DNA of 64,000 nucleotides, taken from assembly GCF_902459465.1 (NCBI RefSeq), contig NC_047068.1, positions 15,624,001 to 15,688,000 of the forward strand, in the 5' to 3' direction. Origin of the DNA: Asterias rubens (lineage: Eukaryota). Every line of letters starts with the position of its first letter. Position 1 is the first letter of the stretch. The notes under the pieces are model-generated. The model was not told the origin of the DNA, did not search any database, and worked only from the letters and a program-made list of their open reading frames with translations. Positions 29,263 to 45,322 of this stretch are shown one piece after another. Position numbers and translations under genes: made by a program.

Positions 29263-29317
29263 ATGCGGTTGCAACATTTTGCCTACCTCATCATTGGTGT
29301 CTTTCTCTTTACGTCGG
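29263..29317 (+). CDS. Receptor exon 1, signal peptide MRLQHFAYLIIGVFLFTS
   Basis: Hydrophobic N-terminal peptide; strong donor GTAAGT, phase 1. Confidence 0.75.
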
Positions 29318-32300
29318 GTAAGTCCAGATTAAAAAAGTAAAAAATAAACGAAAGTTGTAACATAAAAAAGCTTTTTGTAGACAACTTGATACATGCCTTC
29401 TTGGTTCAACAATTCAATCAAGCATACCAGGTAAATATGCGTTGCACTTACAAAGGTTTCCTTGATTATGGGGGCATATGACAATATCTATTGAGGACAA
29501 TAAATATGTAGGGGCCCATCGTATTGAAACTTTACAAAGGGCACCACATGTTTTATTCCAGGGCACACCAACCCTGAGATGCCAGTTTCCGTTGCACTAG
29601 CTGTACTGATGATGCATGTAACGGAGGAGTCCAAACCCGGGATATGGCCTGAAGGGTAACCTCGCTGTGGCCCGTGGGTGCCTATGGCTAAATCGAGGGC
29701 CTGTCAAGTGACTCAAGACACGTTTTCGCGTCACATTTATACCAAGTCTATAGCTACCATGTTTTCTGGTTATTGACGTGCAAACATGGTACCTAGCCTG
29801 CTAACTGTAGAATTTAACAACACTGACAATGTATTAGGATAATTAGGACGAGTCTTGGAAACTGAGATTTATATCCAAACGTGAGAAGGAAGAAATCCCG
29901 ATGAGAAAAAATGATTCACTCATCCTCTTCATTAATTCTCAAACAATCTCGATCCTCCAGAAGACGGTCTGCGCATACTGATCAAAATGTCTTTTCAGAA
30001 CCACCTTAACTCAAAAATGATAAGAGATTAACGTTATTATGGTGTTGTATACCGCAAACCTCACTAATTTCAAATCCTACAAAGTTTCAAATCCTACAAA
30101 TCTCGATTCTGAAAAAAACAGGTTTGGATGCTAATAAACACCTTTCCCCGGAGATGTCGGACGCCCTGCAGCTCCTGAGGCTGACAGAACGGATGCGTTT
30201 CGGCGCGATGTGCCTGCAGGAGAGGTACTGCACCCACGCCGAACTGCTGGGGTTCGGGTGGGAGGAACAATCCTTGGATACCGCGGTGCTGAACCGATTC
30301 TGGCACACGTACTCCTGCACGTTTTTAGAGAATGTCTACTTGTGTCCAGGTGACTGAGAAATTGGTTTAAAATAATTTCATCTTACAACATCCCAAAGAA
30401 CTATTGGGTCCGATTTCATAGCTCTGCTTACTTGCCGCAGAATTATACAATTACGACGCCATGTAAAGCACATGGGTTGTATAAGCACATAATTCCACGG
30501 TAAGAAAGCTATCAAGCCTAGCTTTCAAGAACAACACACCTGGGCCCAATTTTATAAAGCCTGTAAGCACCGAAACTTGCTAAGAAAAAATAGTATTGCT
30601 TATAGGTTTACAGTGTTGTGGCTGGTGCCCCGCTCAAGTTTTACTTAACAAAGAAACCTGCCGCGCAGTATTTTCTGCTTGAAATAAAGTCCAGTTCTAT
30701 ACAGTCCATAAAGTTATCAAAACATTATTGGTTGAAATTATTCACGAATAGCAAAGCATCATCATTACGGTTACATAAATTGGGTTACAGACAAGGAAAA
30801 ACCAAGCTACTGAAAGCTTTTTAATGGTCACGCAAATATAATGTATTGCACGAGTGTTTTTTTATTACGAAAATAATGATATAATGTAAAGTTTGAGTTT
30901 TTTGTATAGATCGTCCACGGTTTGGTTGGGGTGCTGTGTCATTGAGAAATGCAATTAATTGTGTTCCTCTTTACATATAAGAAGGGGTATAAATTGCCCC
31001 ATACTGCATGTAAGCACTGGGGGAACGCTACTAAGGACATTTAGTTTGTTGTGTACCTTTTCTAAACTGTGTTCTTATCTTAATTTCGATGTAAAAATAC
31101 CGTGTTTATTTACTTATTATTTGATCTGATTGACAAACTTTGCTAGTGAAATGTGATAAGGATTAACACTAATGAAATAAATGTATGAAGATGATGTTTA
31201 ACGCAACGTTACAATGTCAATCACGGTTTACAGTGGACGGGGGTTGGAGTGCATGGGGTGAGTGGGGAGACTGTCACGTGACCTGTGGGGACGGAACCAA
31301 GATGAGACAGCGCATCTGCAATTGGCCCGAACCCCAAAATGGCGGCAATGAATGCCACGGGCAGACTACTAGCGTTACGAGCTGCACAGTGATTCCGGCA
31401 TGCCCACAGAATGGTAAGGGATCTGGCAACCGAGAATCATATAAGAACTATAATTGAGTTTCTAGTATTTAATGCAGGGCCCACTTGCTAAGCAAAGATG
31501 CTAAGCACACACAATTTATAGAGCTGTTACTTCTATTATTGAGTATACACAAAGATGCTAATCACAACAAAATTATGCTCACCAGAATAGGTTACAAGAC
31601 AAAAAAACGAAAGAAGAAAAAAAGATCAAATACCCAGCTGGCCAAGCTTTTCAATTCCATTACTGATTATATACACTCCAAAGTAAAAGTTGTTTCAGCA
31701 AGAAAAAGCCATCGAAAACTACAGATGTTGAATACTTTTGATCTTAACAATCTGGCTCATTAGTGGTATTATTTTGCGTATAAATCTAAAGTTGGGGTGA
31801 GATGGGTAGGTCGAAACAATTTCGGGAAACACAAATTTAAATGTTTTATAATAATTGAACATTCTGAATGCCTATAAAATGTCATTGTGTGTCTTTATTT
31901 TGTGTAGAAACAGAGGGTGAATCTATCGAGGATTCAGTACAGAAGAAAGCATTTAAGCTTATGGAGCCATTCAACACTAACGATGCTGAACTACGAGACA
32001 CTTGTATGACTGGACGGTGCAGCTATCAACAAGTACTGGAAATGGTCACACCACGGAACCTTGCGGTACAACAACTGTTCACTTGTTTTATGTCCCTGAT
32101 AAGTTTAAGTCATACACAATGTTCTTTCAGTTAACAACTGGGGCCCACAAGAAGCGGCAAGTTAGCTAAGACCCTTAGACAGAACCTTGCAGTTCAACAA
32201 CTGTTCACTTGTATTATGTCCCTGATAACTTTAAGTCATACACAATGTTCAAGAAGCGGCACGTTAGCTAAGACCCTTAGACAGAACCTTGCAGTTCAAC

Positions 32301-44300: not shown

Positions 44301-45322
44301 ACGCCACCTATCACAAGGACTTCTCGGCTCGGGAAGAGAAGATTAAATTCGACCAAGCACTGGCAGAGGAGAAGAAGAACAAGAAACAGCTGGAGGCAAC
44401 TACAACCAGTCAAACATTGGTGCCAAAACTCAGTCGAAATGGAGTCTCGCAGGATGTGGAAAAGAATATGGATACAGCAGACGATACTGGGATTCAAAAT
44501 GGCGGGAAAGACGCAGAATCAAACAAGGTTTCAAAAGTGTACATCATGGCACAACGTGATGAAGTTCCGGGCACATCAAATGCTCCAAAGCAATATGACA
44601 GTGCGGGGAAAAGACCGTCATCCAGAAGTCAAAGTAATGACATCATTGTCGAGGTAGAAGGCCAGAACCTGACCCGGCGTCCAAGCGAGTCTCTGAGTGA
44701 CAAGGAACTCAATCTAAGACGCCTGTCTCACGAGATCGTTTCGGGTAGGCCAGAGTCTTCTACATCGGGGTCCTCCCTCGGGAGGGCGGACTCCGCACCA
44801 CCGGCAGACGACAACCATGTCCGGGAAGAACCGAAGGAAGAGCCGATTTATGTCAACATTGACGCCATCCGGGAGAGACAACGACTGAGCAAGGCTTCCA
44901 CAAGCAGTTTGAGGGTCTCGAAGGGGGAGTCCTCGGAGTCATTCGACACTGATCATCCGCCGGGGTTAGATTCACCCAACACCCGGGAGAGACTTCAGAA
45001 AGAAGAGCCGGTAGAAGTTGACATGGATGCTGTCCGTGAAAATTGGCAACGGAGTATAATGTCGATACACGGAGCCAGCCCCCGGGCGTCCACCGAACAC
45101 AAAGAGGGTTTGGTCTATGCAAGCAGAGGGGCCGACGGTGCTGACTGGGAACCCGTCAAGGACGTCGTCAAAGACGACAACCCAAGTGGGAGGAGCTCAG
45201 GCCTGAGGAGCTCCGATGGCTCTTTGTCACCAAAGGACGAGGACGAAGCCAGCTCATCGGACAATAGTACAGGAGAAGATGCCAACAAGAACGCATCAGT
45301 TAATGACGATGGTAGTGAATGA
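29263..45322 (+). CDS. Uncharacterised type I membrane protein, about 1520 aa: SP - Gla-like - TSP1 - Gla-like - 7xTSP1 - LamG - LamG - Ig - TM - acidic Ser-rich tail
   Basis: 21 GT-AG exons with fully consistent phases, total 4563 nt: 29263-29317, 30122-30349, 31234-31413, 31908-32065, 32834-32885, 33402-33578, 34035-34208, 34900-35097, 35788-35937, 36295-36465, 37029-37229, 37630-37800, 38329-38573, 39028-39217, 39716-39841, 40551-40795, 41613-41913, 42116-42261, 42513-42654, 43432-43549, 44188-45322. Confidence 0.85.
31234..37800 (+). CDS. Eight symmetric phase 1-1 exons, each encoding one thrombospondin type-1 repeat
   Basis: Each has the WxxWxxCSxxC...R.R.C...C...C pattern (e.g. [27 protein letters not shown]). 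Starts at 31234, 33402, 34035, 34900, 35788, 36295, 37029, 37630. Confidence 0.93.
38329..41913 (+). CDS. Two laminin G-like domains (exons 13-17)
   Basis: FDGSSF...IQFKPSTLSGVL...W.RI...MYIGG...GFRGSISALRVN and FTGQEF...ILKPLAPDGLILY...W..V...VAVG...GYVGSLYEVTIND LamG patterns. Confidence 0.8.
39858..40100. mobile_element. MITE with AGGTTTAGCTGCACGT TIR
   Basis: 16-bp perfect TIR at 39863 / ending 40095, extendable to TA ends; starts 16 bp after the exon-15 donor. Confidence 0.75.
41184..41425. mobile_element. MITE family A with CTG TSD
   Basis: CTG|GGCCCAATTTCATAGAGCTGCTTAAGCA...TGCTTAAGCAGCTCTATGAAATTGGCCC|CTG. Confidence 0.85.
41950..42033 (+). repeat. (GTTT)n microsatellite
   Basis: About 20 units with one interruption. 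It produces the spurious FVCL/KQTN ORFs in the track. Confidence 0.95.
42116..43549 (+). CDS. Ig-like domain (exons 18-19) and transmembrane helix (exon 20)
   Basis: ALQC...ITW...LLLHALDTDNEGLYAC (Ig C-W-DxGxYxC); TM AVMAYAGLICGFVISVFVLSCF followed by basic KCLRLR. Confidence 0.85.
42370..42408 (-). ncRNA. Minimal type I hammerhead ribozyme motif of the Penelope-like type (U3-A8 variant)
   Basis: Minus strand GCCT-TCGAGAA-A-GACCC AGCTA GGGTC-GAAAC-GTC-AGGC: stem I, core, stem II, GAAA, palindromic ACGT stem III, GUC site. Sister copy at 48018-48062. Confidence 0.55.
42689..42950. mobile_element. Two adjacent MITE family B copies
   Basis: GGGGTTGATCTCCACAAAC...TTTGTAAAATCCGACCC then CAG|GGGTCGATTTCACAAAG...GAGATCCACCC|CAG. 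Confidence 0.7.

What the first reader, a model, noticed from the sequence alone, without database searches (positions are those of the whole stretch)
29263..45322. Unusual receptor: Gla-like + 8 TSP1 + 2 LamG + Ig + TM + signalling tail
The exon chain closes in frame over 21 exons, yet the domain order matches no family I recognise. Gla - short disulfide loop - repeats - tandem LamG is the layout of secreted Protein S/Gas6 (which use EGF repeats), while TSP1 arrays mediate phosphatidylserine/LPS recognition in BAI1 (established). Here the parts are fused with an Ig domain into one membrane protein. Hypothesis: an invertebrate cell-surface or engulfment receptor, possibly informative about the origin of Protein S/Gas6-type architecture.
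Basis: partly seen in the sequence, partly recalled or inferred. Interest (0 to 1): 0.78.

Follow-up and report, generated by a model that had tools for sequence, protein, structure and literature searches.

The report
Starfish TSR–LamG–Ig mosaic membrane receptor
This is a real, expressed starfish gene for a large single-pass membrane protein built from shuffled adhesion domains (8 thrombospondin repeats, 2 laminin-G, 1 Ig), and it also contains a degenerate relic of the blood-clotting "Gla" module; it is an unusual mosaic, not a relative of Protein S/Gas6.

Summary
A 21-exon chain (ATG 29263, stop 45320-45322, all GT..AG) closes in frame and gives a 1,533-aa type I membrane protein.

One spliced RNA contig confirms exons 1-8 and the join to exon 9. 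Word shares suggest exons 12-19 are also expressed. The TM and tail exons have no RNA evidence. They rest on frame, splice sites and a conserved tail ORF in a second starfish.

The real order is: signal peptide, helical Cys module A, TSR1, Gla-like module B (two exons), TSR2-8, LamG x2, Ig, TM, 378-aa tail. So the Gla-like part is internal, not N-terminal.

Module B matches the vertebrate Gla exon pair:
- Same phases (1/0/1).
- Same spacing: C-x4-C, then Cys2 +15 aa to the intron, then +3 aa to Trp.
- Smith-Waterman score 54 against factor X Gla, reached by 1 of 20,000 shuffles.

However, B keeps only 3 Glu against 11, has no carboxylase-docking propeptide, and gets no Pfam, PDB or ESM hit. 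It is at most a non-carboxylatable relic.

The LamG domains are closest to agrin and neurexin, not Gas6/Protein S. The Protein S/Gas6-origin and engulfment ideas are therefore unsupported.

The best reading is a lineage-specific adhesion or recognition receptor with a conserved EEPIYVNI (pYxN) tail motif. An architecture search across animals was not possible. An earlier scan note (s1-178684) had already flagged module B on this same window.

The parts
29263..29317 (+). Exon 1: start codon and signal peptide (MRLQHFAYLIIGVFLFTS); ends in phase 1
   Evidence: The RNA contig runs continuously from at least 29200 to 29317 and then splices to 30122. An in-frame stop lies upstream.
30122..30349 (+). 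Exon 2: module A, a predicted helical module with two short Cys loops (C-x5-C ... FWHTY-x-C-x8-C); phase 1-1
   Evidence: RNA joints are at both ends. No Pfam, PDB or ESM match. AF2 single-sequence model shows three helices at pLDDT 58. Similarity to factor X Gla is weak (score 38, shuffle p 0.003).
31234..31413 (+). Exon 3: TSR1; phase 1-1
   Evidence: Pfam TSP_1 at 2.5e-13. RNA joints at both ends.
31908..32065 (+). Exon 4 (G1): first exon of Gla-like module B (..QKK AFKLMEPFNTNDAELRDTCMTGRCSYQQVLEMVTPRNLA); phase 1 to 0; 158 nt
   Evidence: RNA joints 31413>31908 and 32065>32834. Geometry compared with F9 exon 2, which is 164 nt. Alignment to factor X Gla.
32834..32885 (+). Exon 5 (G2): second exon of module B (DTYWTNLNCYKHLEGCA), holding the Trp 'stack' and a C-x6-C loop; phase 0 to 1
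   Evidence: RNA joints at both ends. Corresponds to F9 exon 3, the hydrophobic stack exon.
33402..37800 (+). Exons 6-12: TSR2-TSR8, one repeat per exon, all phase 1-1. Coordinates: 33402-33578, 34035-34208, 34900-35097, 35788-35937, 36295-36465, 37029-37229, 37630-37800.
   Evidence: Pfam TSP_1 from 1.3e-14 to 3.6e-10 for six of them; TSR3 is weak at 19.8 bits. TSR6 is closest to thrombospondin-1, properdin, UNC5 and BAI1 TSRs in the PDB. RNA joints cover up to 35097>35788.
38329..39841 (+). Exons 13-15: LamG/LNS domain 1 (38329-38573, 38989-39217, 39716-39841); phase 1-1 overall
   Evidence: Laminin_G_2 profile positions 1-45 and 53-100 are hit on successive exons. Neurexin-1alpha at 0.004 in the PDB. 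Homologous to LamG2 (score 80 against shuffles 30+-5).
40551..41913 (+). Exons 16-17: LamG/LNS domain 2 (40551-40795, 41613-41913); phase 1-1 overall; its first exon is 245 nt, as in LamG1
   Evidence: Pfam Laminin_G_1 and Laminin_G_2. Agrin 7.7e-10 and neurexin-1alpha 8e-9 in the PDB.
42116..42654 (+). Exons 18-19: one Ig domain (42116-42261, 42513-42654), with LQC...W...DTDNEGLYAC; phase 1-1
   Evidence: I-set profile positions 18-49 and V-set positions 72-107 on the two exons.
43432..43549 (+). Exon 20: transmembrane segment (ALGYAVMAYAGLICGFVISVFVLSCF) followed by the basic stop-transfer KCLRLR
   Evidence: This is the only 19-aa window with Kyte-Doolittle mean above 2. Splice sites are canonical and in frame. 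No RNA evidence.
44188..45322 (+). Exon 21: 378-aa cytoplasmic tail, rich in S/D/E, with two conserved blocks: a juxtamembrane block, and EEPIYVNID...DTDHPPGLDSPNTR...EEPVEVDMDAVRENWQ. Stop codon at 45320-45322.
   Evidence: P0001 from another starfish is 61% identical over HMMER's matched stretches, and BLASTP gives 69% over one 90-aa block. No Pfam domain. No RNA evidence.

Best explanation
This is one expressed 21-exon gene. It lies between a sulfamidase (SGSH) gene and a forkhead gene and encodes a 1,533-aa type I membrane glycoprotein.

The ectodomain is a string of phase-1/phase-1 exon cassettes, the signature of exon shuffling. In order they are: helical Cys module A, TSR1, module B, TSR2-8, two agrin/neurexin-type LamG (LNS) domains, and a membrane-proximal Ig domain.

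Module B most likely descends from the two-exon Gla cassette. It has lost the carboxylase-docking propeptide and most Glu residues. It therefore cannot work as a calcium- and phosphatidylserine-binding Gla domain and probably serves as a small disulfide-stapled helical spacer or binding surface.

Inferred mechanism: the TSR array and the LNS pair bind matrix or cell-surface glycans or proteins. The signal passes through a largely disordered tail. Two blocks of that tail are conserved between starfish, and one holds an acidic EEPIYVNI motif (pYxN, the consensus for Grb2-type SH2 domains).

Shown: exon structure, splicing of the 5' half, domain identities and tail conservation. Inferred: the ligand class, tyrosine phosphorylation, adaptor recruitment, and the link between the TM/tail exons and the rest of the mRNA.
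For: - Gene model: the in-frame 21-exon chain has canonical splice sites.
- Splicing: the spliced RNA contig covers exons 1-8 and joins to exon 9.
- Selection: 9 of 13 exonic differences between that RNA and the window are synonymous.
- 3' expression: the word share of the RNA run over 37400-43399 is 0.14. The share expected if all eight predicted exons there are expressed is 0.141.
- Domains: Pfam TSP_1 x8 and split LamG and Ig hits. LamG2 is closest to agrin and neurexin. LamG1 and LamG2 are homologous, and each has a 245-nt first exon.
- Module B similarity: score 54 against factor X Gla, compared with 24+-4.8 for shuffles (1 of 20,000). The next-best of 2,247 open stretches in the window scores 39.
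- Module B geometry: identical to F9 exons 2 and 3, derived from exon lengths 88/164/25 nt in PMC8911121 and the PDB register.
- Membrane and tail: a single TM segment. The tail ORF is conserved in a second species, in two blocks that include PIYVNID.
Against: - There is no transcript evidence for the junctions after exon 9, and none at all for the TM and tail exons. A secreted isoform or a different 3' end is possible.
- No full-length orthologue could be retrieved, so conservation of the architecture is unknown.
- The Gla relation has no Pfam, PDB-sequence or ESM support. The AF2 single-sequence models are too poor to test the fold.
- The function rests on domain analogy only.
- The YVNI motif is a short linear motif and could be coincidental, although it is conserved.
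Confidence: 0.7

Rival explanations
1. Functional Gla receptor. Module B, and perhaps A, would be gamma-carboxylated and bind calcium and phosphatidylserine. The protein would then be an engulfment receptor and an evolutionary precursor of the Protein S/Gas6 layout.
For: Module B has Gla-type exon geometry and Cys/Trp spacing. Tandem LamG domains follow a repeat array, as in Protein S/Gas6. TSRs of BAI1 bind phosphatidylserine (established knowledge), and TSR6 hits the BAI1 TSR at 1.3e-12.
Against: - Module B has only 3 Glu in the 41 residues aligned to factor X, which has 11.
- The residues at propeptide positions -16, -10 and -6 are Q, E and D, not the F/A/L-type consensus (sequence inspection; the need for an exosite-binding domain is from PMC9146348).
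- The module is internal, after TSR1.
- No Pfam Gla hit at E<=10.
- The LamG domains hit agrin and neurexin, and no Gas6, Protein S or SHBG chain.
- There are no EGF repeats, and the tail has no engulfment-type motifs.
Confidence: 0.06
2. The Gla resemblance is chance. Modules A and B would be lineage-specific helical, disulfide-stapled linkers unrelated to Gla domains, and the protein simply a TSR-LamG-Ig mosaic.
For: No profile, PDB or protein-language-model support. Most of the alignment score comes from two Cys, Ser-Tyr and one Trp. A and B are not significantly similar to each other (score 26, p 0.23).
Against: Only 1 of 20,000 shuffles reaches the observed score. The spliced module scores 54, while the best unrelated open stretch in 86.7 thousand residues (aa) of six-frame translation scores 39. 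Independently of the sequence, the intron lies in the same phase and at the same residue offset as in F9: Cys2 +15 aa, then Trp 3 codons into the next exon. The first exons are also of similar length, 158 against 164 nt.
Confidence: 0.27
3. The locus yields more than one product. One would be a secreted TSR-LamG(-Ig) protein. The TM and tail exons would be used only in some isoforms or belong to a separate transcript.
For: No RNA junction was seen beyond exon 9 (one search covers only 29200-35199). Searches with the tail found no full-length protein that carries it.
Against: The chain stays in frame through the TM and tail exons with canonical sites. No start codon with a signal peptide precedes the tail. 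The tail ORF is under constraint in a second starfish. In that species its contig carries same-strand ORFs upstream, at spacings like those of the LamG and Ig exons here. The databases searched hold very little starfish sequence, so the absence of a hit means little.
Confidence: 0.12

Closest known systems
Vertebrate vitamin K-dependent Gla domain (factor IX/X, prothrombin), encoded by exon 2 (propeptide and Gla) plus the 25-nt exon 3
   Same: Module B has the C-x4-C loop followed by Ser-Tyr, a Trp 18 residues after the second Cys, and a conserved Leu four residues before the first Cys. The intron lies in phase 0, 15 residues after Cys2 and 3 codons before the Trp. The flanking phases are 1 and 1, and the first exons are 158 and 164 nt.
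   Different: Module B has only 3 Glu against 11 and no carboxylase-docking propeptide consensus. It sits internally, after a TSR, instead of after the signal peptide. Its second exon is longer (52 nt) and adds a C-x6-C loop. It gets no Pfam hit.
Protein S / Gas6 (Gla, loop, EGF x4, LamG x2; secreted)
   Same: The loose order is similar: a Gla-like module, then a repeat array, then tandem LamG domains.
   Different: The repeats are TSRs, not EGF domains. The LamG domains resemble agrin and neurexin rather than Gas6/Protein S. An Ig domain, a TM segment and a long tail follow. The Gla-like module is degenerate and is preceded by module A and TSR1.
Transmembrane Gla proteins (PRRG1-4/TMG), and the ascidian Gla-RTK (the latter from my own knowledge)
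   Same: These are single-pass membrane proteins that display a Gla-type module outside the cell and carry signalling motifs in the tail (TMG description in PMC9146348).
   Different: Those proteins have a canonical, carboxylated N-terminal Gla domain and almost no other ectodomain. This protein has a 1,100-aa mosaic ectodomain and a Glu-poor module.
TSR-bearing single-pass receptors: UNC5, semaphorin-5, THSD7A
   Same: All are type I membrane proteins whose ectodomain contains thrombospondin type 1 repeats, together with Ig domains in UNC5. The TSRs here are closest to the thrombospondin-1, properdin, UNC5 and BAI1 type.
   Different: The tail has no ZU5/UPA/death domains and the ectodomain has no Sema/PSI domain. 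None of those families has LamG domains or a Gla-like module.
Neurexin, agrin and CSPG4-type LNS/LamG proteins
   Same: The LamG domains are most similar to agrin and neurexin LNS domains. The tandem LamG pair sits in a membrane-anchored protein, as in neurexin and CSPG4.
   Different: There are no EGF spacers and no CSPG repeats. The C-terminus (..DDGSE) is not a class I PDZ ligand. An N-terminal TSR array is present.

Membership tests
Gla domain (Pfam PF00594; vitamin K-dependent proteins) | Significant match to the Gla profile or to solved Gla domains | tested here: not met
   Pfam gives 0 families at E<=10 for exon 2, for G1 and for the extended G1. PDB phmmer finds no Gla chain. ESM features find no Gla cluster.
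Gla domain (Pfam PF00594; vitamin K-dependent proteins) | A cluster of Glu residues to be carboxylated (9-13 in haemostatic proteins; PMC9146348) | tested here: not met
   Module B has 3 Glu in the 41 residues aligned to factor X residues 1-41, which hold 11.
Gla domain (Pfam PF00594; vitamin K-dependent proteins) | An exosite-binding propeptide for the gamma-glutamyl carboxylase (PMC9146348) | tested here: not met
   The residues upstream of 'KK|AFKLMEPF' are NETEGESIEDSVQKK. Positions -16, -10 and -6 are Q, E and D (sequence; the consensus is from my own knowledge).
Gla domain (Pfam PF00594; vitamin K-dependent proteins) | A C-x4-C disulfide loop, with an aromatic-stack Trp 18 residues after Cys2 | tested here: met
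   CMTGRC is followed by 18 residues and then W in module B, and aligns without gaps to factor X residues 13-41. Module A has C-x5-C and a different spacing, so it does not meet this feature.
Gla domain (Pfam PF00594; vitamin K-dependent proteins) | Two-exon structure with phases 1/0/1 and the intron 3 codons before the Trp | tested here: met
   G1 is 158 nt (phase 1 to 0) and G2 is 52 nt (phase 0 to 1). F9 exon lengths of 88/164/25 nt were derived from Table 3 of PMC8911121. The register was fixed by the PDB alignment.
Gla domain (Pfam PF00594; vitamin K-dependent proteins) | Actual gamma-carboxylation and calcium-dependent membrane binding | not testable with these tools
   This needs protein expression and mass spectrometry.
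Protein S / Gas6 / SHBG-type LamG pair | LamG domains closest to Gas6, Protein S or SHBG; EGF repeats between the Gla and LamG parts; a secreted protein | tested here: not met
   The PDB hits are agrin, neurexin and laminin alpha1. No Gas6, Protein S or SHBG chain appears at E<=10. No EGF exon was found, and a TM segment is present.
Thrombospondin type 1 repeat superfamily | TSP_1 profile match with the WxxW and CSxTCG motifs | tested here: met
   Eight exons hit PF00090, seven above the cut-off. WxxW is present in all eight repeats, and C-x-x-[ST]-C-x-x-G in five.
LamG / LNS domain | Laminin_G profile match across the whole domain | tested here: met
   Successive exons hit profile positions 1-45, 53-100 and 55-125. 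Each exon alone is below the cut-off because the domain is split across exons. Agrin hits at 7.7e-10.
BAI / ADGRB adhesion GPCR | HormR and GAIN domains and a 7TM region after the TSRs | tested here: not met
   There is a single hydrophobic segment, and no Pfam domain in the exons after the Ig domain.
UNC5 netrin receptor | Ig-Ig-TSR-TSR ectodomain with a ZU5-UPA-death domain tail | tested here: not met
   The tail has no Pfam family at E<=1, and the domain order differs.

The most novel reading that the evidence does not exclude
Module B is a true descendant of the two-exon Gla cassette, moved as a phase 1-1 unit into a TSR receptor of an echinoderm. There it survives without carboxylatable Glu residues. 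If so, the Gla exon pair, with its intron position, predates chordates. It would also mean the Gla scaffold can persist as a carboxylation-independent 'pseudo-Gla' fold.
Probability: 0.4. Interest if true: 0.6.

Novelty: new variant of a known kind. Interest (0 to 1): 0.45.

Why it matters
It is a clean, transcript-backed example of exon shuffling. Every ectodomain module is a phase 1-1 cassette, and together they build a receptor architecture not described in model animals.

If the Gla relation is real, the characteristic Gla exon pair existed outside chordates, in the ambulacrarian lineage. It would also show what becomes of such a module once it escapes vitamin K dependence.

The value is mainly to people who study the evolution of coagulation/Gla proteins and of the deuterostome adhesome. 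The gene has no functional data. It is probably already present as an uncharacterised model in public annotation of this genome, but I could not check this.

Tried and rejected
- **19-exon model.** My first model skipped the two Gla-like exons and also closed in frame. I rejected it because the RNA contig includes them and uses the donor at 32065, not 32032 or 32044.
- **Full-length homologues.** The one exhaustive search, run with the tail, found only a 364-aa ORF fragment from another starfish (P0001) and a chance hit (P0002).
- **Word-index searches.** The three searches (tail, G1, LamG2b) returned only P0001 and this species' own ORFs, P0003 and P0004. The collection holds very little starfish sequence, and the length filter excludes full-length proteins. 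These blanks say nothing about how widely the family occurs.
- **P0001's contig.** No DNA was available for it.
- **L001.** It is the same species as the window, so it is not an orthologue.
- **AF2 models.** Exon 2 alone (pLDDT 58) and G1 alone (pLDDT 66) were run without alignments. Foldseek against the PDB gave only meaningless hits with E>5. The spliced module B has no reference, so it was neither folded nor profile-searched.
- **ESM Atlas.** Searches on A and B found nothing meaningful.
- **Kulman et al. 2006 (Ciona Gla proteins).** The paper is not held in the library.
- **Literature.** Searches found no described TSR-LamG-Ig-TM family and no echinoderm Gla report.
- **Engulfment motifs.** NPxY and a spaced ITAM are absent from the tail by inspection.

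
Full report
**Observation**

The window is animal DNA. An earlier scan note calls it the starfish Asterias rubens; I did not verify this independently.

I translated the + strand between 27 and 48 kb and chained open stretches through canonical AG/GT sites. That gave an in-frame 19-exon model.

Two further exons lie there, in the intron between TSR1 and TSR2. Including them also keeps the frame.

Laying public runs on 29200-35199 settled the question. One 2,364-nt contig from the RNA run X1 (word depth 275) is spliced as follows:
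- 29200-29317
- 30122-30349
- 31234-31413
- 31908-32065
- 32834-32885
- 33402-33578
- 34035-34208
- 34900-35097

Its next letters are the start of the exon at 35788.

It runs from the ATG at 29263 to the stop at 45320-45322 and encodes 1,533 aa.

Of 13 exonic differences between the RNA contig and the window, 9 are synonymous. That fits purifying selection in this frame.

**Domains**

- All eight TSR exons hit Pfam TSP_1. Seven are above the gathering score, and TSR3 is just below. TSR6 is closest to thrombospondin-1, properdin, UNC5 and BAI1 repeats in the PDB.
- WxxW is present in every repeat, and the O-fucosylation consensus C-x-x-S/T-C-x-x-G in five.
- The next five exons hit complementary parts of the Laminin_G profiles, and the two after them hit I-set and V-set halves.
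- The two LamG domains are homologous to each other (score 80 against 30+-5 for shuffles). Both begin with a 245-nt exon.
- Exon 20 carries the only strongly hydrophobic segment.
- The 378-aa tail has no Pfam domain.
- Every ectodomain module is a phase 1-1 cassette. This is the classical signature of exon shuffling, and Hynes (PMC3308698) describes the principle.

**The 3' half**

I had only one reads call, so junctions after exon 9 were not seen directly. There is indirect support.
- Run X1 holds 0.14 of the sampled 31-mers in 37400-43399.
- Given the 1.56% divergence of that run, 0.141 is expected if all eight predicted exons there are present. The RNA-verified 5' stretch gives 0.12 observed against 0.108 expected.

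The TM and tail exons lie outside both stretches. They rest on:
- the reading frame and canonical splice sites;
- the hydrophobic profile;
- an ORF from another starfish (P0001, ENA contig) that conserves two tail blocks.

Those blocks are the juxtamembrane ~55 aa, and a 90-aa block that is 69% identical and contains PIYVNID, DTDHPPGLDSPNTR and EEPVEVD.DAVRENWQ. The P0001 contig also carries same-strand ORFs upstream, at spacings like the LamG and Ig exons here.

**The Gla question**

The actual layout is: signal peptide, module A (exon 2), TSR1, module B (exons 4-5), TSR2-8. Neither module hits Pfam Gla at E<=10, any solved Gla chain, or any Gla cluster by ESM features.

Even so, the spliced module B aligns without gaps to human factor X Gla residues 13-41. 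The alignment, factor X above and module B below, is:
- [29 protein letters not shown]
- [29 protein letters not shown]

The score is 54 against 24+-4.8 for shuffles, reached by 1 of 20,000. The best of 2,247 other open stretches in the window scores 39.

The exon geometry agrees independently of the sequence. Table 3 of PMC8911121 implies F9 coding exon lengths of 88, 164 and 25 nt. That gives phases 1/0/1, with the intron 15 residues after the second Cys and 3 codons before the Trp. Module B has exons of 158 and 52 nt, the same phases and exactly the same two distances.

Against a working Gla domain:
- There are only 3 Glu where factor X has 11.
- The upstream residues do not resemble the carboxylase exosite-binding propeptide that PMC9146348 describes as required.
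- The module is internal.

Module A is weaker. It has C-x5-C, no intron, a score of 38 (p 0.003) against factor X only, and no significant similarity to B. The AF2 single-sequence models were of low confidence, and Foldseek returned nothing meaningful.

I rate descent of B from the Gla cassette at roughly 0.4-0.7 depending on how much weight the intron evidence gets, and a functional Gla domain at under 0.1.

**The Protein S/Gas6 idea**

- LamG2 hits agrin (7.7e-10) and neurexin-1alpha (8e-9).
- LamG1 hits neurexin (0.004).
- No Gas6, Protein S or SHBG chain appears at E<=10 for any of four LamG exons.
- There are no EGF repeats, and the protein is membrane-anchored.

The resemblance in layout is therefore superficial.

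**Function (inferred)**

The protein looks like a cell-surface adhesion or recognition receptor. The TSR array and LNS pair are plausible glycan or matrix binders, by analogy with thrombospondin, semaphorin-5, agrin and neurexin.

The tail is mostly unconserved and acidic and Ser-rich. It keeps a juxtamembrane block and an acidic EEPIYVNI motif, which fits the pYxN preference of Grb2-type SH2 domains (my own knowledge). No NPxY, spaced ITAM, death domain or PDZ ligand is present.

**Context**

The gene sits between the last exon of a sulfamidase gene (25163-25984) and a two-exon forkhead gene (50728-51447 and 56335-57288). All three are on the + strand.

**Novelty and limits**

I know of no family with the order TSR-(Gla-like)-TSR7-LamG2-Ig-TM, and the literature searches found none. 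The protein databases available here could not be queried with a spliced full-length sequence and contain little echinoderm data. The taxonomic range is therefore unknown.

Lineage-specific mosaics of these domains are common in invertebrate deuterostomes. Another note in this scan (s1-178784) reports a different phase-1 mosaic in the same genome.

My verdict is a real and moderately interesting new variant. Its most interesting piece is the Gla-type exon pair, which the scan had already flagged separately (s1-178684).

Noticed in passing
window 25163-25984 (+): This is the last exon of a sulfamidase (SGSH) gene. Pfam gives SGSH_C at 9e-16 and Sulfatase at 1.8e-12.
   Followed up: partly
window 50728-51447 and 56335-57288 (+): Two open stretches carry the N-terminal half (profile positions 2-51) and the C-terminal half (48-85) of a Forkhead domain. 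Together they form a two-exon Fox gene downstream, with an intron inside the forkhead domain.
   Followed up: partly
window 30400-30600, 31460-31560, 32400-32600, 33600-33800, 41180-41260: High-copy interspersed repeats lie in the introns, with the motif GGGCCCAATTTCATAGAGCTGCTTAAGCA. Word depth in the laid 5' stretches (up to 33800) reaches thousands to 37,000 in all three runs, and many contigs break there. The 41180-41260 copy was seen by sequence only. They look MITE-like.
   Followed up: no
window 32148-32350: A 102-bp tandem duplication (2 copies, 93% matches) lies in the intron between the two Gla-like exons, starting about 80 nt after the G1 donor.
   Followed up: no
window 41949-42035: A (TGTT)22 microsatellite lies in the intron between the LamG2 and Ig exons. 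The metagenome contig L001 from the same species diverges from the window exactly here.
   Followed up: no
window 29248-29256: A minimal upstream ORF (ATG GAC TGA) lies 7 nt before the start codon, inside the transcribed 5' UTR.
   Followed up: no
L001 (ENA ERZ23498661, SOLA22-1 metagenome scaffold): A marine metagenome assembly holds an 871-nt contig nearly identical to the LamG2b exon and its flanking introns. Starfish DNA is therefore present in that environmental sample.
   Followed up: partly
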